This document shows, one piece after another, positions 43,548 through 54,657 of a DNA stretch of 64,000 nucleotides (positions are counted from its first letter, which is position 1; the number at the start of each line of letters is the position of its first letter). Made by a program: the position numbers and the translations under genes. Below the pieces are notes generated by a model. The model was not told the origin of the DNA. It made no database searches and was given only the letters and a program-made list of their open reading frames with translations. Location: NCBI GenBank assembly GCA_943704425.1, contig CALSCP010000556.1, positions 31,517 through 95,516 on the forward strand, read 5' to 3'. The stretch comes from Ministeria vibrans ATCC 50519. Lineage: Eukaryota > Protista > Filasterea.

Positions 43548-44361
43548 ATGCTGCGCCTCACCAGCACTCGCAGCGTTTCTCGCCCCCTGATCGACCTGTG
43601 CAGGGTTCCATCGACTCACCGTGCAAACCACAGTCGTAAGCGTGCCGTGTGGATCTCTCAGTGTCTCACTTTGCGTTTTGTGACTAGCAGACTCTTCCAC
43701 ACACGAACATTTGGACCAGGACGTCTCCGACGACGACTCTGCCCTCCCCAACGTTCGTCTGACGACTCGCGATTGTGCTCATGCGCACGAAATTGTCGAA
43801 GAGCTTGGTGTAGTGGTTGGGACGAGTGCGCGCAGTCGCAGCATATTCCACGACATTTGGGGGCGACTCAAGGGCGTCTGGGGCGGCGAACTCCTCATGT
43901 ACAGGGATCTCTTTCAGGTACACAGGCACTGCAATGACTACGGCATGGAGGTGGCTCTCCAGAACACACATATATATACCACACACACACACACACACAC
44001 ACATATGTACATACACACACATATATGTACGTATACATACAGACACACTCACACTCACTCACTCACAGATACTCACTCACTCACAGACACTCACATACTC
44101 ACGCACTTACACACTCACACACAGGCGACAACGGCAGAAGCGACAAAGAACGCAATGGAAGACGCACACCGTCTCGGTGCAACCGATATTGTGCGTGTCC
44201 GCTACGAAGTAACTACCTTCTTCTTTCATCACATAAAGGCACACACTCAATTCCTCTCTTCCTTCCACTCCCAGGTCTCGTCGAATGAGGAAAAGATCAT
44301 TGGAGTGTCGTGTTTTGTACTTTGTGTTGGTACTGCAGTCCGCACAACCCCAAAAAAGTAA
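43548..44361 (+). CDS. YbjQ/UPF0145-like protein with a possible mitochondrial presequence, 4 exons
   Basis: LTT..EIVEELGVVVGTSARSRSIFHDIWGRLKGVWGGEL..Y, AMEDAHRLGATDIVRVRYE, GTAV; Arg/Ser-rich N-terminus MLRLTSTRS. Confidence 0.85.
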
Positions 44362-44536: not shown

Positions 44537-47500
44537 CTACTTCTTCGATTCGTCTTCATCCTCATCAGTTGTCCTCGACTTCTTCTTCTTCGCCGCACTC
44601 TCTTCGCTAGCGTTGGTTTCGGCTTGTCGCTTATTCCTCTTTTCATTGTGCAGCTCACTCCTTGCGCGATTCATCTCCGGAGATGGCTCGTCACTCACGA
44701 CCACAGTGTCTGCGGACAGAACAGACTGCTTGCTCAGCCGAGACACATTCTCTGCATGTCCCTCAGAGATCGTCGTGCGCGACAGATCCCACAATTCCTT
44801 TGCCACGGGGTAGAGCGCTTCTTTGGTGGCAGAAGCAGGAGTCCCCCTTTTCATTAGCAGTCGGACACTTTGGTGCATGTGCGCGCCGGGAAAATCCCCG
44901 TACTCAGGCTTGCCGTTCCAGTCCTTCGGGTTAGGCACACGCTTCTTCTCCTTCATAAACTTCGTCAACAGTTGAAGTGTGACACTCCACGATGTCTTCT
45001 CCTTGCTGCCCGTTCGCTCACGACTCGATTGCCCCGTCAGAGATGCGCTGCCAACGGGCTGTGCTTCCACGCCGCATCCAATTCCATCGCGAGCAACCGG
45101 AGCAGACGCGCGTCGCACATCCATGTCCTTGCTCGCAAGCTCGCCTGGAACAGTAGCGTCCAACTGCATCGACAAATGACGAACCGGTTGCCCAACCGAA
45201 GGGAGCCCCACGCGCGTTTCCTTCCCAATCTCAGTTTCTCCACCCGCGCCGGATTCTTCGCCCTCATCAGCGCTCGCACTGCGCGATCGCTTTCGGCTGT
45301 TTGCGTCCATGTCAACAGTCTCCTCTCGCGAGACGCTACCACTTGCACTGCGACCTCGGCAACCTTGCGACACCAGAAGAAACCCCGCTCTGTCGTGGTT
45401 CTTGAGGCACCACAGGTCCACTTGCACATCTTGCCGCGACGTGTTGAAACAATTCTGTCCGAGCATAAAGTTGGTTAAAATTAGTGTGCAGCGCTCACCA
45501 GTTTGCACAGGGAGAAGAAGTCCCTGTTGCATCAATTTCCGATGATCCGTTTTTTCAGGGGAGATCATGGTCAGCACGGATTTCTGAGAAAACGCTGCGT
45601 CGATATTGATGCCCCTGTGCTTCGGGCACACCTCCACATGCTCTTTCCACAGCTCCATCTCGGCCTCGTCCAATGTCAGACTTTCCAGCTCCATGTCCTC
45701 CTTGCCCATTGACTCCACACGCATCTTCTCCCCCTCACGCTGTGCACGGTCAAGCGGCACTTTCACACAGTCGCAGCATCTTTCCTTGTAATAGTGCTCC
45801 GCTTGCACGCGTGTGTGTGTCTTGAACTGCTCAAACATGTTGTAGCGCACGACCCGAAGACCAGCGCTCACCAAGTCGGATGCAAAATAGAAATCCTCGG
45901 CCACCGGCACAGGCTCAAACCACACCCCCTTGCGACACGACTCCTTCACATTCACCAGCAACGTACACTGTACCGGCGCTGCGTCAAACGGCGTGCGGGA
46001 ATACTGAATGGGTCGAAACCGCTGCACACCAAGCAGACCAAACTCGGAGAATTCACCACTGAACTGGGTCACGCTGGTGAGACCGCTTAGACTCGTCGAG
46101 CCAGGCATATCCAATCGCCATCGTTTGTCGGCTGCCCACTGAACATCATCAGAGACCTGTCGCTCCAGCTGCAACAACACGCGACCGGCTGAGACACATC
46201 GGAGTTCAGACTTGCCCCCGCTGTCTTCTTCGGATGGCGTATCATCAGTCGAGTGTCGATCGTAGTAACGCAAAATGTTATCGTCCATCATGACCACGGT
46301 GTCCATTCCAACGCTGTGAGCCAATCGCTGCACAAAAAGTCGCGCAAATCCCGCCTTCCCATTATCGCACGTCACTACCTCGCCTTTGAACGCTCCACCA
46401 GGCGCACGCATACTGTCGGGCAGCTGAACAATGGCAAGCCTTGCTCCCCAAACGAGACGAAACTCCTCAAAATGCTCCTTGCGACAGACCACCACTTGGC
46501 GCACCGCTACACCGACACGCTTCCCGTCCACATTCAATCGCAAGGCGTCTTCCATGTCCAGGCGCGCCTTGATGGGCCGGATCGACGGCACAAAGATCCA
46601 CGAACGCAGCCATAATTGGCCGTTGTTGCTGCGGCACCACCGTTCATAGACATGCTGTAAGGTGGCATAGGCCGTCGACTGGTCAATGGACTCAAGCCAA
46701 TCTCGTGGAAGAGACAAATGAAGTGCTACTTGCTCCCCACCACAGCAATCAAGAGGTGGTAACTGACCGGACAGTATCACGGAGAAATCGGCAACCCCAA
46801 CCGTGTTGGAGCTCAATGTGGCAACCTTTAGGTCAAACTCCGAGCGACTGCACGATGCCCCGTTGGCAGTCAATGGTTGAAACAAGGAGGGGTGGAGTGG
46901 CGGTGGTTCTGCAACATGCCAGTCCTTGATGGGCTCGTTGGCAAGCATTTGCACGATTCGTTTTTGATCTTCCCTTCTCGCAGCAGTACCTTCAATACGA
47001 ATTTCGCCGTATTTGCGCGCGTACATGCCATTCCTGAGGGGCCCTCTAAACTTCTCAGTGCACAGTGGAATGTTGACCTCGCGCTGCTCGGGATGCTGCC
47101 ACTCTTGCTCCACATCCTTGTGTCGGTCAACAGTCACAGGCAGCGGCTCGACGTCCGGCGATGGTTCCACTGCACGCTTTATCTTGTACAACAGCGCGAG
47201 GTACGTCCCAGTCTTGCCAATTTGCGGCGCTGCAGTCAGCACCCACCGATTCGTCGAAAAGTTGCCCACAGTGTTGTCAAAATCGTAGCTCTTCTTCTGC
47301 TGCTCCGCCTTCGGAGTAAAGTCCAGCCACTTTTTCGAGTCTTGGCCACACTGCGGCGGTCGATTGCTCATCTTCCTGAGGTACTCGTCGGGACGACCCG
47401 ACAGAATATCTTCCAGCGACACCTGTCCCATCTTGAAGCCTTTCTCAATGGTCTTGCGGAACCCACGACTGATCAACGCGTACGGCAACTCGGGTAGCTG

Positions 47501-50500
47501 TGTTGAAGAGAGACTCGCGTAGCGACACAGTCGGCCAAGCTCCTGCGTGACAGTCGAGAGAGAAAATTGGCTAATCGTCTCCTTCTGCAAGCGCAAGTCC
47601 ATGCAAAATAGCGAATGAGGGAACGTATCACCCATGCGCCCCTTCTGGTTGAGCACGAGAAGGCACGGCAGGTCACGAAGATCCTCGTAAAGACGAGGAA
47701 TGCAATTTGTGTTCGTGTCGGTGGTGGAAGGTGTCGTTGGTGTCGTTGGTGCCGTTGGTGTTGTTGGTGTGATTAAAGTGTGGTGCACTGGCATCGATTG
47801 CTGAGCGTTGGACGACGCATTGAAAAGGTTAATCTGCTTGTGCCAGTTGCTGAATGTGGTGCACAGCGACATCGTGCCAAAGTCGGCCAAAGGGAGAATC
47901 TTGAGGTTCCGCGTGGTGAGAGCGCGACGTACAGCGTTGTAAAACTTGATATCGTCGCCTTGGCTGCCGTTGATCCGCACAAGTGCCATCTTGCCGTCAC
48001 CTTGTGTTTTACTCGACTGCGCCAAAGTGGCAACGATGGTCTCCGTCTCGAGCTGGGACTTTTCCGTCGCAGCCTTACGGATGTCTTCGGGGAGCAATGC
48101 GAGGAGCATGGTGACAAGGTTCTCTTCCTTGGCCGACACTTTGCCGGTGTGGTGTAAGTAGCGCTTGGCTCGCAACACATGCGAAAAAAAGCGCACCACC
48201 AGAATGGAGAACTTGCTTGCGTTTTGCACATCCTTTGTGTCTGCTTTGTTGTGAAACTCAAACGTTTGAGTCGCAGTCTTGTCGAGCATGTATTCTGTAA
48301 CATCTCCGTCGCACAAGGCAATTCTGTGGTTGTTTTTTCGGTGCACGTACGCTGCATTGAGGCCGCTTTGAGTTGTGTCGAAGAGGCGACCAACACTCGG
48401 GAGCCGGAAGAAGTCGGAGACTGAATACGATGGTGCTGACGGCTGAGATTGGAAATGTCGCGCGTACAGAATCGCCGCCATGCTGGACACAATGTCGCGG
48501 AATTGCTCCAAAACAACATGGCGCATCGCGTCAATGTGGTTCTCCAACCCCAGCTGATCGGCCAAGTTGTCAGGGAAGACGCTCATGGTGCGAGTGTGCA
48601 GCTCGTCGCCGTCGCAGGAAAAGTCGTCGTGGAGCAATATGGCCGCGCAGTAGTCGTACAAGAGAAAGTCGTACTTTGACGCCGATATCTTGCTCGGTGG
48701 ACCGCTTACAAAGTTGTAGAGGTAGTCGTCCTCGCGCAGACGAGCGTCCTGCTCGTTGATGTAGTGCATGGACGCAATGTAATGGTTGACCGAAACGTAC
48801 TGCGGCTGCGAGGATTCAAGCTGCAGAAGGAACTGCGAGTTGTGTTCGCAGGAAGCTGCCGCATTACTGGGACCCGCGCAGCAGGCGCTGTCGTCAGACG
48901 GTGGCCGAAGACGCTTTTGTCCACCATTGTCACTGTCACCATCAAGCTCGAAGCTGACAAAGCCAAATCCGCGCGGGAAGGTCATGGCAAACGAGCGCGC
49001 CATTTCTCGATCAGGGTTCAGCAAACCCGTTTCGTCGCACACGTACAGCGTAGAGGTGTTGTTGACGATGAGCTTCAACAACACAGGATCGGGAAGGGAC
49101 TCGGAACGCTTCGACCGCGTGTCTTTCTCCACGTGAAATCGGTTGTGTGCTCCGCCACGCACGAGCTGGGTCAAGTTTCTACGAAACGCACTCTGTTTTT
49201 TGAGCAAAAGGGTGAACGGCATAACCATGTTGTCTTACGAATCGCTTGCGCCAAGGAACACGTCGCCATCGGTGTACTTGTCGACAAGGCGGAGGTGAAA
49301 AGGCGTTGACGTCTTGATGAGGTGCTGCTTCTGAGCCTCGGTCCAGTCAATGACGTGAAAGTCGGGCACGCGACTCTTTTGCGAGAGGACGTTGTAGGGT
49401 GTGGCCGACACGAGCAGCATTTTCACATTGTCCTTGTTGACAAGCTGATTGTCGTTGAGAATAGCCTGGTGGGCACCCGTCGACGTGATTGCATAGTGGC
49501 ACTGGAGATACAGCAAGAATCACAAAAATAATAATAATGAGACAAAATCCCAAGGATGAGTTGCATGCATTCTCTCACCTCGTCTGCGACGATGACAACA
49601 AGGTTTCGCTCGTTTTTTGCGCTTTGGCGGAGCTGCTCGTGCTTTTGGCGAAACTTGCAGCTGTCGACGTACATAAACACCAGCTTTTCCGCGCTGTCGC
49701 CGTCGCCAATGAGGTCGAGCATGTCGTCCTCAAGGCGCGCCTGTGTCTGGTCACGCAGCTGATTGAATGCGGGTGTGAGAATGACAAACTCAAAGGTGTC
49801 AAAGCGCTCCAGTGAGTTTGACTTGAACAGGTTGTCGAAGATGATGTCGGCAAGGGAGCGTTGCGTTTCATAAAAGGGGAGGCGAGGAGGAGGGGGTGGT
49901 GGTGCGCAGAGAGAGACGCTGCCGTCCTTGAACATGGGCGGAACGGTTCTCAGCAGATCTTCGTTGACCTTTTCGGCAGTCTCGTGGATGGCCTGCTCGT
50001 CTTCCTCGAGCACCGTCACACAATGCAACGAGAGGATCAGCGCAAGGACGCTGCACTCGTTGCCGTTGTCGTCGTCTGCGACCTTGTCGTCGACCACTTG
50101 GTCCTCATTCTTTTTGACAAACTCCACGAGGCGGCGGTATGGCCTTGTGTGAAGCAGCGTCGAAGGCGAGGCAGAGAAGCTGGAGCTAGAGCGGATTTGT
50201 TTGATGACTCGCTCCTGCAGCGACGCACGGAATTGCTGAGCGATTTCAGCAACATTGGAATCGACACACGCGAGTGGCGCGCTGGTGGAAGAAGAAGTGG
50301 GATCACCTGGCGGAGCAAGCACAGTCATGTGGAGTGCTGGGGTGTCAGCGTGGCGCGCGTCTGCGGATGAAAGAGCAAATTCCCGCTCGCACAAAATCGC
50401 AATGTTGAGCTCGAGCTGCTCAAGATCGACGCTCGCCGCGACAGAGAATCCCGGTGCCGACGATAGGTCGTAATCGTATATGTGTTCTGGAATGGTCGCA

Positions 50501-50863
50501 TCGGGATCGATTTGCACCAAAAATTTGGCATCTGAAAAAACATATGAAAATGAAATGAATGAATAATGAAATATAATAATTATAATAATTACAATGATTA
50601 TGATCGAGTCAATATCATTTGAAACTTGGCTCGAAACTTCGCTCACCTTTCACTTTCAAGGCTTCATCCTTAGCAACCCCGCCTTGCCGCTGCTGCTGCT
50701 CGACCTTGTGGTCCAGAGGAACCGATTGAGCGTGGCTTGAGCCGCTCACTACACAACAAATGAAATCAAAATGAAATCAAAATTAATATCATTATAAAAA
50801 ACCTTAAAACCCCGAAAGCCCACTAAGTAAACCCACCTCACACCCATATTGCACACCTGCCAT
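44537..50863 (-). CDS. GREB1-like protein: circularly permuted SF2 helicase + TAGT (base-J glucosyltransferase-like) glycosyltransferase; 5' exons uncertain
   Basis: VILTPAFNQLRDQT (Ia), VIVADE|CH (II), LVSATP (III), KGRMGDTFPHSLFCMDLR (V), QELGRLCRY (VI), then LTAAPQIGKTGTY (I). GT part: WIFVPS, GFARLFVQRLA, VVMMDDN, AEDFYF..SAGLRVVRYN. A ~60-nt intron (~49238-49179) removes the in-frame TAA. Confidence 0.82.
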
Positions 50864-51528: not shown

Positions 51529-52345
51529 GAAGAGCCGAACAAGAGGAGACGCACTAAAAAGTGACAATTTATCTCAAATACACGCACTATTTATGAAAAT
51601 TGCTAATAGTACGTATTCGATTAGGTGTTTTAGTATAATGTTGTTGTGTCAGCAGAACAATACTACTGCAATACTAAATATATTGGTCAATTGGTGTGAT
51701 AAGTAATAAGTGATTACTGTCAACAGTTAAAGTTTGAGGTTTGATAAGAGCTCCTTCTTTCAGAGTGTGTGATCTGTAAAATTGAAAAGATAAATTTCAG
51801 ATCACTTTAATTCATTCATCATATCACTATAAATACATCAACGCCTTACGCACAGCGACACAGCGCACTGATGAACGGGCAGAGATCTAAGGCGCACGCG
51901 TGTGACGAGAAAACGAAAAAGCAAGAAAAAGAGTCTCTGGAAGATTCGCTTGCACTTGCATCAAAACGGGCCGAGGACGGGCAAACGGAAACCGATGTGG
52001 TCGTTGATATGACACGTACCGTTCAAAAAGCGAATCGTTGGTTTCTTTTTCTCATCTTTTCACAAAAATATAATCTTTGTCGTTTAGAATTATCAATATT
52101 CGAATCGGTTGTTGCGACGTTGTACAGCGATACAGCGACAGTTGCGGAAAGGGAAGTGGCTGTGAGTACATTGGAGAACCACGCCGGGCAGGATGATCAC
52201 AAGAGAGTGGCGATTGTACACTCTGGCGCAATTCAGCCGATTGTTGCGCTTCTTCTCGTTGGAACAGACAGCGCCAAAGAGAAGGCGGCGGGTGCGCTGA
52301 GAAGCCTGGCCCGTAATAACGACAACCAAGTGGCCATTGCACGCG
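51529..52345 (+). repeat. Segmental duplication, copy A (paralogous to 61118 onward; continues into the ARM arrays)
   Basis: 36 identical nt GAAGAGCCGAAC..AAAAAGTGA (51529-51564 = 61118-61153), then colinear, highly similar spacer and ARM-gene 5' region. Confidence 0.92.
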
Positions 52346-54657
52346 CAGGTGCGATTGAACCGCTGATCGCCTTGTTGCGCAGTGGAACCGACTTTGCTAA
52401 GGTGGAGGCGGCAGGTGCGCTGTTCAGCCTGGCCACCAACCACGACAACAAAGTGACCATTGCACGCGCAGGTGCAATTGAACCGCTGATTGATGTGTTG
52501 CGCAGTGGAACAGACAGCGCCAAGGAGAAGGCGGCAGGTGCGCTGTGTAGCCTGGCCGTCAACGACGACAACAACGCAGTGACCATTGTTCGCGCAGGCG
52601 CAGTTAAACCGTTGAACACTCTGTTGCGCAGTGGAACCGACATTGCCCAAGAGGTGGCGGCGTTTGCGTTGTTTATCCTGGCTACCAACGACGACAACAA
52701 AATGGCCATTGCACATGCAGGTGCAATTGAGCCGCTGATTGATGTGTTGCGCAGTGGAACCGACACCGCCAAGGAGCAGGCGGCGGGTGCGCTGTCCAAC
52801 TTGGCCCGCAACAACGACAACAAAGTGACCATTGCACGCGCAGGTGCAATTGGACCGCTGATTGATGTGCTGCGCAGTGGAACTGACAGCGCCAAAGAAA
52901 CCGCAGCGGGTGCGCTGAGGAACCTGGCCGTCAACGACGACGACAACAAAGTGACCATTGCACATGCAGGTGCGATTGAACCGCTGATTGCTGTGTTGCG
53001 CAGTGGAACCGACAGCGCCAAGGAGAACGCAGCGGGTGCGCTGAAGAACCTGGCCGTCAACGACGACAACCAAGTGACCATTGCACATGCGGGTGCAATG
53101 GAGCCACTGATTGTTGTGTTGCGCAGTGGAACCGACACGGCCAAGGAAAAGGCAGCTGCGGCGCTGTGGAACCTGGCTGCCAACGACGACAACCAACTGA
53201 CCATTGCACGCGCAGGTGCGATTGAACCGCTGATTACTCTGTTGCGCAGTGGAACCGATAGTGCCAAGGAGAACGCGGCAGGTGCGCTGTCCAACCTGGC
53301 CCGCAACGACGGCAACCAAGTGACCATAGCACGCGCAGGTGCAATTGAACCATTGATTGCTGTGTTGCGCAGTGGAACTGACAGCGCCAAGGAGAACGCG
53401 GCGGGTGCGCTGTCCAATCTGGCCGTTAACGACGACAACAAAGTGACCATTGCACGCGCAGGTGCGATTGAGCCGCTGATTGCCTTGTTGCGGAGTGGAA
53501 CCGACACCGCTAAGGAGAAGGCGGCGCGTCCGCTGTGGTGCCTGGCCGCCAACGACGATAACAAAGTGACCATTGCACGCGCAGGTGCAATTGAACCGCT
53601 GATTGTTGTGTTGCGCAGTGGAACCGATAGTGCCAAGGAGCAGGCGGCAGGTGCGCTGTGGAGTCTGGCCATCAACAACGACAACCAAGTGACCATTGCA
53701 CGCGCAGGTGCGATTGAACCGCTGATTGTTGTGTTGCGCAGTGGAACCGACATTGCCAAGAAGAAGGCGGCAGGTGCGCTGAGGAACCTGGCTGTCAACA
53801 AAGACAACAAAGTGGCCATCGCACATGCAGGTGCGATTGAACCGCTGATTGCTGTGTTGCGCAGTGGAATTGACAGCGCCAAGGAAAACGCGGCGGCTGC
53901 GCTGAAGAACCTGGCCATCAACGACGACAACCGAGTGACCATTGCCCGAGCAGGTGCAATGGAACCGCTGATTGCTTTGTTGCGCAGTGGAACCGACAGC
54001 GCCAATGAGAAGGCGGCGTGTCCGCTGTGGAGCCTTGCCGTTAACGACGACGACAACAAAGTGACCATTGTTCGCGCGGGTGCGATTGAACCGCTGATTG
54101 CTCTGTTGCGCAGTGGAACCGACACTGCTAAGGAGCAGGCGGCAGGTGCGCTGTGGAGCCTGGCCCGCAACGGCGACAACCAAGTGACCATTGCACGCGC
54201 AGGTGCAATTGAACCGCTGATTGATGTGTTGCGCAGTGGAACCGATATTGCCAAGAAAAAGTCGACAGGTGCGCTGAGAAACCTGGCCGTCAACAAAGAC
54301 AACAAAGTGGCCATAGCACGCGCGGGTGCAATTGAACCGCTGGTTGATGTGTTGCGCAGTGGAACCGACAGCGCCAAGGAGCAGGCGGCGGGTGCGCTGT
54401 CCAACCTGGCCGTCAACGACGACAACCAAGTGACCATTGCACGCGCAGGTGCGATTGAGGCAGCAGTGGCTCTTCTGAGCAATGAGAGTGCATCCGACCG
54501 CTCCAAAGAGATCATTGTGCGTCTCTTACTCCAGTTGTCCAATGGAAATAGTATCAATAAGTCGGCCATCCAACAGAGTGGTGCACTGGCTCTCCTGACC
54601 AACATGGGTATTGCAGGGTCTACTTTGGCCAAGGATGCATTTATTAGTCTTCTTTGA
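51871..54657 (+). CDS. Armadillo-repeat protein 1: 18 near-identical 41-42-aa repeats plus caps; probable 72-nt intron at 52016-52087
   Basis: Unit AIEPLIxxLRSGTDxAKExAAGALxxLAxNxDNKVTIAxAG; 123/126-bp DNA repeats; T-rich GT..AG stop-free 3n segment present in both copies. Confidence 0.92.
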   Translation: MNGQRSKAHACDEKTKKQEKESLEDSLALASKRAEDGQTETDVVVDMTRTVQKANRWFLFLIFSQKYNLCRLELSIFESVVATLYSDTATVAEREVAVSTLENHAGQDDHKRVAIVHSGAIQPIVALLLVGTDSAKEKAAGALRSLARNNDNQVAIARAGAIEPLIALLRSGTDFAKVEAAGALFSLATNHDNKVTIARAGAIEPLIDVLRSGTDSAKEKAAGALCSLAVNDDNNAVTIVRAGAVKPLNTLLRSGTDIAQEVAAFALFILATNDDNKMAIAHAGAIEPLIDVLRSGTDTAKEQAAGALSNLARNNDNKVTIARAGAIGPLIDVLRSGTDSAKETAAGALRNLAVNDDDNKVTIAHAGAIEPLIAVLRSGTDSAKENAAGALKNLAVNDDNQVTIAHAGAMEPLIVVLRSGTDTAKEKAAAALWNLAANDDNQLTIARAGAIEPLITLLRSGTDSAKENAAGALSNLARNDGNQVTIARAGAIEPLIAVLRSGTDSAKENAAGALSNLAVNDDNKVTIARAGAIEPLIALLRSGTDTAKEKAARPLWCLAANDDNKVTIARAGAIEPLIVVLRSGTDSAKEQAAGALWSLAINNDNQVTIARAGAIEPLIVVLRSGTDIAKKKAAGALRNLAVNKDNKVAIAHAGAIEPLIAVLRSGIDSAKENAAAALKNLAINDDNRVTIARAGAMEPLIALLRSGTDSANEKAACPLWSLAVNDDDNKVTIVRAGAIEPLIALLRSGTDTAKEQAAGALWSLARNGDNQVTIARAGAIEPLIDVLRSGTDIAKKKSTGALRNLAVNKDNKVAIARAGAIEPLVDVLRSGTDSAKEQAAGALSNLAVNDDNQVTIARAGAIEAAVALLSNESASDRSKEIIVRLLLQLSNGNSINKSAIQQSGALALLTNMGIAGSTLAKDAFISLL

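What the first reader, a model, noticed from the sequence alone, without database searches (positions are those of the whole stretch)
44537..50863. GREB1-like permuted SF2 helicase-glycosyltransferase with intact motifs: candidate DNA base-glycosylation machine
Seen: helicase motifs run Ia-II(DECH, split by an intron)-III(SAT)-V-VI(QELGR), and only then Walker A (APQIGKT, ~47205-47245), i.e. a circular permutation. They are followed by a GT-A-like domain (MMDDN ~46277-46291; AED ~45895) and a tail faintly like helicase-associated domains (WSVTLQLLTKF..RVP). Known: animal GREB1 has this layout (PQIGKTG, DLR, QELG), and its glycosyltransferase belongs to the TET/JBP-associated family that includes the kinetoplastid base-J glucosyltransferase. 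As I recall, the animal helicase motifs are degenerate. Inference: an ancestral-type, ATP-driven enzyme that may glycosylate oxidised DNA bases, implying an undescribed hypermodified base in this lineage.
Basis: partly seen in the sequence, partly recalled or inferred. Interest (0 to 1): 0.8.

Follow-up and report, generated by a model that had tools for sequence, protein, structure and literature searches.

The report
GREB1-like helicase-glycosyltransferase gene in a protist
This is an intact gene of the already described GREB1-like family, a rearranged helicase-type ATP motor fused to a sugar-transferring enzyme related to DNA-base glycosyltransferases; no partner enzyme that would prepare DNA bases for glycosylation was found, so the proposed new DNA base remains speculation.

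Summary
On the minus strand, 44537-50535, at least three exons encode a protein that matches Pfam cpSF2-GREB1 in every exon (1.4e-10, 1.9e-18, 8.4e-40) and TAGT (4.6e-11). They run II (DE|CH, split by a 77-nt intron), III (SAT), V, VI (QELGR..R), then Walker A (PQIGKTG), then the glycosyltransferase DDN and ED motifs.

It is not new in kind. Both Pfam families were built for this layout. Shin et al. 2021 (PMC7968844) already list GREB1-like proteins in many protist lineages.

Intact helicase motifs are the rule in this clade. Two paralogs in the same genome have them, as do 107 of 108 full-length relatives (named ones are coral proteins).

The "helicase-associated" tail is not supported.

A whole-genome search found no TET/JBP dioxygenase. 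This is a moderate negative, with no positive control.

Two other first-reader notes of this scan flagged GREB1-like genes elsewhere in this genome, probably the two paralogs.

Verdict: new member of a known kind; interest about 0.3.

The parts
50650..50863 (-). Unresolved 5' end: candidate start codons (ATG at 50863 and at 50847) and a possible mini-exon (~50650-50759)
   Evidence: Reading-frame inspection. The open frame of exon 1 has no in-frame ATG near its start. Phase-1 donors after both ATGs fit the acceptor at 50536. There are no RNA data, so this is inference only.
49579..50535 (-). Exon 1 (319 codons): lineage-specific N-terminal region, then the start of the permuted helicase. It carries a Q-like FYETQ (49861-49875), a Ia-like FVILTPAF (49765-49788) and the first half of motif II, VADE (49579-49590).
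   Evidence: Pfam cpSF2-GREB1 1.4e-10, profile positions 4-114. Alignment with the paralogs and coral relatives.
49502..49578 (-). Intron 1, 77 nt, GTGAGA..CCAG, splitting the DE|CH box
   Evidence: Sequence. The joined motif equals ADECH of the intronless paralogs.
49239..49501 (-). Exon 2: CH of motif II (49496-49501) and motif III VSATP (49397-49411)
   Evidence: Pfam cpSF2-GREB1 1.9e-18, profile positions 114-185. Alignment.
49179..49238 (-). Intron 2, 60 nt, GTAAGA..CGTAG, phase 2. This is the most likely model. An alternative phase-0 pair (donor GAC|GTGTTC, acceptor AACAG|AGT) is not excluded.
   Evidence: Sequence and frame bookkeeping. No RNA evidence.
44537..49178 (-). Exon 3, 1546 codons plus TAG: insert domain, second RecA-like half, displaced Walker A, TAGT domain and tail
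   Evidence: Uninterrupted ORF. Pfam cpSF2-GREB1 8.4e-40 and TAGT 4.6e-11.
48548..49084 (-). Insert domain between the two helicase halves (exon-3 residues ~32-210), shared with coral relatives
   Evidence: BLASTP to 50+ relatives, best 1.7e-5. The fold is unresolved: the paralog model has pLDDT <50 there.
47519..47989 (-). Second RecA-like half: MALVRI strand, motif V KGRMGDTFP (47618-47644), DLR (47591-47602) and motif VI QELGRLCRY (47519-47545). A Pro/Thr-rich stretch (47720-47767) stands where relatives have a Cys/His cluster.
   Evidence: Near-invariant columns in A1. Motif blocks. The Cys/His cluster is present in 108/108 relatives and in both paralogs but absent here.
47204..47233 (-). 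Displaced Walker A / motif I (AAPQIGKTGT), lying C-terminal to motif VI. This is the circular permutation.
   Evidence: Sequence. It is invariant in the family. In the paralog model, the strand, P-loop and helix (residues 837-864, pLDDT 60-89) are aligned into one compact alpha/beta domain together with residues ~40-140.
45806..46510 (-). TAGT glycosyltransferase domain (GT-A fold): PS.R (46577-46594 region), GFAR (46337-46351), DxD as MMDDN (46277-46291) and ED (45890-45904)
44540..45805 (-).
   Evidence: No Pfam family at E<=10. No similarity to the paralogs or to 120 relatives. The AF2 model is disordered beyond the GT core.

Best explanation
The gene encodes an intact member of the GREB1-like family. 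A circularly permuted SF2 (DExH) ATPase has had its P-loop strand moved behind motif VI. It is followed in the same chain by a TAGT-type GT-A glycosyltransferase.

Shown: domain identity, motif order, conservation of every ATPase and glycosyltransferase signature residue, and the GT-A fold.

Inferred: the permuted motor binds a nucleic acid and hydrolyses ATP. The GT-A domain uses a nucleotide-sugar held by the DDN motif and a divalent metal. The motor positions or gates the transferase on a nucleic-acid-bound target.

The acceptor is not settled. I rate a protein acceptor on chromatin or RNP, as shown for human GREB1 with ER-alpha, as more likely than a hydroxymethyl-pyrimidine in DNA. The reason is that no TET/JBP hydroxylase was found in this genome.
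For: - Pfam cpSF2-GREB1 matches all three exons and TAGT matches exon 3, all above the curated cut-offs.
- Motifs II, III, V, VI, I and DxD occur in that order.
- The same order and residues occur in two paralogs and in 103-108 of 108 full-length relatives. DECH and SAT lie outside the stretch used to find those relatives, so they are not ascertainment artefacts.
- Near-invariant catalytic columns.
- GT-A fold with the DDN just after a confident strand.
- Kinship with phage DNA-base glycosyltransferases.
- A 1546-codon open exon argues for a functional gene.
- Human GREB1 O-GlcNAcylates ER-alpha, and GREB1-like proteins are reported in many protists (PMC7968844).
- No Tet_JBP match in the 29.7-Mb assembly. 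The same tool found weak TAGT hits (23-49 bits) and AlkB-type 2OG dioxygenases.
- Coral relatives add ankyrin and OTU modules, which act on proteins.
Against: - No biochemical or expression data.
- hhalign against two canonical SF2 helicases of the same genome found nothing. The only canonical-family hint is a sub-threshold ResIII hit over motifs II-III (E 0.04).
- An intact nucleic-acid motor fused to a domain whose closest characterised relatives glycosylate DNA bases fits a DNA acceptor just as well.
- The TET/JBP negative lacks a positive control, and the assembly is fragmented (2860 contigs).
Confidence: 0.6

Rival explanations
1. One reading: an ATP-driven DNA translocase that glycosylates oxidised pyrimidines (hmU/hmC) in DNA, as JGT does in kinetoplastids. 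This would produce an undescribed hypermodified base in this lineage.
For: - The TAGT domain matches phage 'beta-glucosyl-HMC-alpha-glucosyltransferase' phrog_842 (1.5e-6) and phage TAGT structure models.
- The helicase motifs are intact.
- The genome also has a solo, phage-like TAGT gene.
- NLS-like basic clusters occur in the tail (by eye).
- From my own knowledge, JGT is a TAGT enzyme acting on hmU in DNA (Bullard 2014; Sekar 2014). I did not read these papers here.
Against: - No Tet_JBP match anywhere in the assembly, nor within 14 kb either side of the solo TAGT gene.
- Only one partial C5-methyltransferase-like locus exists.
- The only assayed GREB1-clade enzyme modifies a protein (PMC7968844).
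- No note among about 8,700 first-stage notes on this genome mentions TET or JBP. This is a lead only, not evidence.
Confidence: 0.15
2. An RNA-directed or conflict/immune-type enzyme. The DExH motor senses or tracks RNA or foreign nucleic acid, and the transferase marks RNA, a viral genome or an associated protein. This would fit the multi-copy, fast-diverging nature of the family.
For: - Three deeply diverged paralogs plus a solo TAGT gene sit in a small genome. The window copy is only about 32-34% identical to either paralog in TAGT (p1 and p2 are about 65% identical to each other).
- Corals carry large multi-copy families, several on one contig, with Ank or OTU additions.
- Two paralogs are intronless.
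- STAND-like and Mrr-like ORFs lie near the solo TAGT gene.
Against: This is purely circumstantial. There is no defence-system model hit and no linkage data for this gene. The neighbouring genes in the window are ordinary eukaryotic genes.
Confidence: 0.1
3. A decaying or non-functional paralog. The window copy has lost the Cys/His cluster that every relative keeps, and it may be on the way to pseudogenisation.
For: The Cys/His cluster is absent and replaced by a Pro/Thr-rich stretch. The tail is lineage-specific and of low complexity.
Against: The exon has 1546 open codons, the splice sites are canonical, and every catalytic motif of both enzymes is intact.
Confidence: 0.04

Closest known systems
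Animal GREB1 / GREB1L
   Same: The cpSF2-GREB1 domain is followed by a TAGT domain in one chain (Pfam PF20692 + PF20691). The nearest ESM-Atlas clusters are animal GREB1 (0.86, 176 shared features).
   Different: - No GREB1_N, GREB1_2nd or GREB1_C domains were found.
- The helicase motifs are intact here, whereas the human helicase is described as catalytically inactive (PMC7968844).
- There is no N-terminal Zn-binding domain match.
- The tail is unrelated.
Coral 'uncharacterized' GREB1-like proteins (for example Oculina, Montipora, Stylophora, Acropora; P0027, P0079, P0093, P0120)
   Same: These are the best sequence relatives: 39-46% identity over motif V to Walker A, E down to 1.7e-30. They share the permuted order, intact DECH/SAT/QxxGR/GKT motifs, the DDN and ED motifs, and the insert domain.
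   Different: The coral proteins carry a Cys/His cluster inside the second helicase half and C-terminal ankyrin repeats, and one has an OTU domain. The window protein has none of these.
Kinetoplastid base-J glucosyltransferase (JGT) and phage TAGT / glucosyl-HMC glucosyltransferases
   Same: Same TAGT family and GT-A fold, with a DxD motif.
   Different: Those are stand-alone enzymes that work with TET/JBP or other pyrimidine hydroxymethylases. Here the domain is fused to a helicase, and no TET/JBP gene was found. The solo TAGT on contig C312 is the closer analogue: phrog_842 scores 1.3e-15 there against 1.5e-6 here.
JBP2 (SNF2 ATPase fused to a TET/JBP hydroxylase; from my own knowledge)
   Same: The logic of fusing an SF2 motor to a DNA-modification enzyme. 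This is a functional analogy only.
   Different: A different ATPase family, no permutation, and a hydroxylase rather than a glycosyltransferase. Not tested here.

Membership tests
GREB1-like (cpSF2 + TAGT) family | cpSF2-GREB1 domain (PF20692) above the curated cut-off | tested here: met
   137.5, 66.9 and 40.9 bits in the three exons against a cut-off of 26.2, in colinear profile order.
GREB1-like (cpSF2 + TAGT) family | TAGT domain (PF20691) C-terminal to the helicase in the same chain | tested here: met
   43.5 bits against a cut-off of 27.5. It lies in the same exon as motifs V, VI and Walker A.
GREB1-like (cpSF2 + TAGT) family | Circular permutation: Walker A lies after motif VI | tested here: met
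   The motif order II<III<V<VI<I holds in the sequence and in 103 of 108 relatives. Structural support is weak.
Animal GREB1/GREB1L orthologues | GREB1_N (PF15782), GREB1_2nd (PF20688) and GREB1_C (PF20267) domains | tested here: not met
   None was reported at E<=1 to 10 in any exon. The animal clusters carry them.
Catalytically competent SF2 (DExH) ATPase | Walker A GKT, Walker B DExH, motif III SAT, motif VI Q..GR..R | tested here: met
   All are present and near-invariant in the family alignment.
Catalytically competent SF2 (DExH) ATPase | Two RecA-like domains with the P-loop inserted into domain 1; ATPase or translocase activity | tested here: inconclusive
   The paralog model has pLDDT 44 and only the domain-1 core and the P-loop unit are confident. 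Matches are generic Rossmann-like folds. hhalign to canonical helicases found nothing. Activity is not testable with these tools.
GT-A metal-dependent glycosyltransferase | GT-A fold with a DxD motif after a core strand | tested here: met
Base-J-type DNA glycosylation system (JGT with JBP1/2) | A TET/JBP hydroxylase in the same genome | tested here: not met
   PF12851 gave 0 candidates in the 29.7-Mb assembly. The negative is only moderately strong: there was no positive control and the assembly is fragmented.
Base-J-type DNA glycosylation system (JGT with JBP1/2) | Glycosylated hydroxymethyl-pyrimidine present in DNA | not testable with these tools
   Needs nucleoside LC-MS/MS or antibody and sequencing signals.
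Helicase-associated (HA) domain in the tail | Match to the HA family (PF03457, as I recall the accession) or conservation among relatives | tested here: not met
   No Pfam family at E<=10 for exon-3 residues 1201-1546. No BLAST similarity to the paralogs or 120 relatives.

The most novel reading that the evidence does not exclude
In a unicellular relative of animals that appears to lack TET/JBP enzymes, and possibly DNA 5mC, an ATP-driven permuted helicase carries a DNA-base-type glycosyltransferase along nucleic acid. It glycosylates a base (DNA or RNA) made by a still unknown route. Together with the phage-like solo TAGT gene, this would mean an undescribed glycosylated nucleobase close to the animal stem, and it would reveal the ancestral job of the cancer gene GREB1.
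Probability: 0.1. Interest if true: 0.8.

Novelty: new member of a known kind. Interest (0 to 1): 0.3.

Why it matters
GREB1 is a much-studied hormone-response and cancer gene, and the role of its dead helicase is unexplained. Relatives in single-celled organisms keep every ATPase residue, so they are the natural place to find out what the motor-plus-transferase machine originally did and whether its acceptor was DNA, RNA or protein. For this window alone the gain is modest. It is a sound annotation and extends the family to one more protist genome, with three paralogs and a solo phage-like TAGT gene. It also shows that the family persists where no TET/JBP enzyme can be found, which weakens the assumed link to oxidised DNA bases.

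Tried and rejected
- Word-based protein searches with all of exon 3 and with the paralog's residues 200-1450 found nothing. Only a search limited to motif V through Walker A worked.
- A PDB sequence search with the paralog helicase gave no meaningful hit.
- The AF2 model of the complete helicase domain was too poor for a fold assignment: paralog, 886 residues, 33-row alignment, pLDDT 44. Foldseek found nothing. The VIA wide search gave only generic Rossmann-like matches.
- hhalign of the family alignment against two canonical ResIII-type helicases of the same genome found nothing.
- The idea of an HA-like tail was rejected.
- I looked for a TET/JBP gene next to the solo TAGT gene and found none.
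- Iyer et al. 2013 (NAR) could not be read here, and the supplement of Shin et al. 2021 is not held.
- I did not run the large representative-protein search, because the family scans had already settled the identity.
All searches of the window gene were done exon by exon, by reference. The complete helicase domain was modelled on the intronless paralog instead.
- The contig is not human.

Full report
**What is there.** The minus strand between 44537 and about 50860 carries one gene.
- Exon 3 is a 1546-codon open frame.
- Upstream lie exon 2 (49501-49239) and exon 1 (50535-49579).
- The introns are 77 and 60 nt with GT..AG ends.
- The true start is unresolved. Exon 1 has no early in-frame ATG, and several phase-compatible mini-exon models exist between 50650 and 50863.
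Every search of the window gene was done exon by exon, by reference. The step of searching or folding the spliced protein was left out.

**Identity.**
- Pfam finds cpSF2-GREB1 in all three exons (1.4e-10, 1.9e-18, 8.4e-40), with colinear profile coordinates.
- Pfam finds TAGT in exon 3 (4.6e-11, 43.5 bits against a cut-off of 27.5).
- No other family appears. In particular, the animal-specific GREB1_N, GREB1_2nd and GREB1_C domains are absent, and nothing matches the tail.
- The nearest ESM-Atlas clusters are animal GREB1.

**Motifs.**
- The order along the chain is: Q-like FYETQ, Ia-like, II (VADE|CH), III (SAT), an insert domain, V (KGRMGDTFP), DLR, VI (QELGRLCRY), then Walker A (AAPQIGKTGT). 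In the transferase come PS.R, GFAR, DDN and ED.

**Relatives.**
- The 29.7-Mb assembly holds two further GREB1-like genes, on contigs C1367 and C1735. Each is a single ORF, of 2088 and 2021 codons. There is also one solo TAGT gene on C312.
- A word search limited to motif V through Walker A found 175 relatives, with a best E of 1.7e-30 and 39-46% identity. The named ones are uncharacterised coral proteins, many with ankyrin repeats and one with an OTU domain.
- Of 108 full-length relatives, 107 keep DE[CA]H and 106 keep SAT. These motifs lie outside the stretch searched. In 103 relatives all six motifs stand in the permuted order.
- Intact ATPase motifs are therefore the norm in this clade, not a peculiarity of this gene.
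- In the TAGT domain the window copy is about 31-34% identical to either paralog and about 28-34% identical to the coral proteins. By that measure it is about as far from its paralogs as from the corals, so the duplication is old or the copies evolve fast.
- One real difference stands out. All 108 relatives and both paralogs have a Cys/His cluster inside the second helicase half. The window copy has a Pro/Thr-rich stretch there instead.

**Structure.**
- The TAGT region of the window gene was modelled with a 31-row alignment (pLDDT 62, core 70-89).
- In the viral model library the best matches include phage 'TET-associated glycosyltransferase' proteins and a glucosyl-HMC glucosyltransferase.
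- PHROGs gives phrog_842 at 1.5e-6.
- The whole helicase domain was modelled on the intronless paralog and came out poor (pLDDT 44). Only the DECH/SAT-bearing core (residues 10-140) and the C-terminal strand, P-loop and helix (837-864) are confident.
- hhalign to canonical helicases failed. A ResIII hit over motifs II-III is sub-threshold (E 0.04).

**The functional claim.**
PF12851 gave no candidate at all.
- The same tool did pick up 23-49-bit TAGT matches, five AlkB-type loci and 34 ResIII matches.
- The negative is therefore meaningful. It is not proof, because there was no positive control and the assembly has 2860 contigs.
- One partial C5-methyltransferase-like locus exists.
- No TET/JBP gene lies within 14 kb either side of the solo TAGT gene.

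**Literature.**
- Shin et al. 2021 describe human GREB1 as a Zn-binding domain, a catalytically inactive permuted SF2 helicase and a glycosyltransferase.
- They show that it O-GlcNAcylates ER-alpha.
- The 2013 paper that defined TAGT and proposed DNA glycosylation for this family could not be read here. That attribution is from my memory.

**Earlier notes.** Other agents of this scan take the genome for a marine, Capsaspora-like filasterean. I did not test this. Filasterea is not in the published list, so this would be a small taxonomic extension.

**Verdict.**
- The family assignment is secure.
- The thing is a new member of a known kind.
- The mechanism most likely combines an active nucleic-acid-dependent ATPase with an active nucleotide-sugar transferase.
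- The acceptor is open. I lean to a protein acceptor over a DNA base, because the hydroxylase that would supply the base was not found.

Noticed in passing
G000:C312:14329-15654 (L015:4330-5655, minus strand): A solo TAGT gene (442-codon ORF) is much closer to phage DNA-base glycosyltransferases than the GREB1-like copies are: phrog_842 1.3e-15, and the ESM-Atlas nearest clusters are phage TAGT at 0.91. Its N-terminal ~230 residues are unassigned. It is the better JGT analogue in this genome.
   Followed up: partly
G000:C1367 (L013:1772-8035, minus) and G000:C1735 (L014:1981-8043, minus): Two GREB1-like paralogs are single uninterrupted ORFs of 2088 and 2021 codons, in a genome that other notes describe as intron-rich. 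The window copy has at least two introns. The L013 ORF contains a short run of masked bases (X) near its C-terminus.
   Followed up: partly
window 47720-47767: A Pro/Thr-rich stretch replaces the Cys/His cluster (C..C.H.H) that all 108 full-length relatives and both paralogs carry inside the second helicase half.
   Followed up: yes
L027:3017-6877 (minus) and L027:8758-9429 (minus), i.e. G000:C312 ~22.0-28.4 kb: A 1287-codon STAND-type ORF (weak AAA_16 / NB-ARC matches) and a small ORF with an Mrr_cat restriction-endonuclease-like match lie about 6-13 kb from the solo TAGT gene.
   Followed up: no
G000:C2017:21733-22185 (L016:1450-3138, plus): This is the only C5 DNA-methyltransferase-like locus found in the assembly. 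The match covers only the first half of the profile (positions 19-162), so its type (DNMT2-like or other) is undetermined.
   Followed up: partly
window 43900-44200: A (TG)n/(CA)n-rich microsatellite-like stretch lies immediately 3' of the gene.
   Followed up: no
window 51871-54657 (plus): The neighbouring gene is a 928-codon ORF of near-identical armadillo-type repeats. Other first-reader notes already flag it.
   Followed up: no
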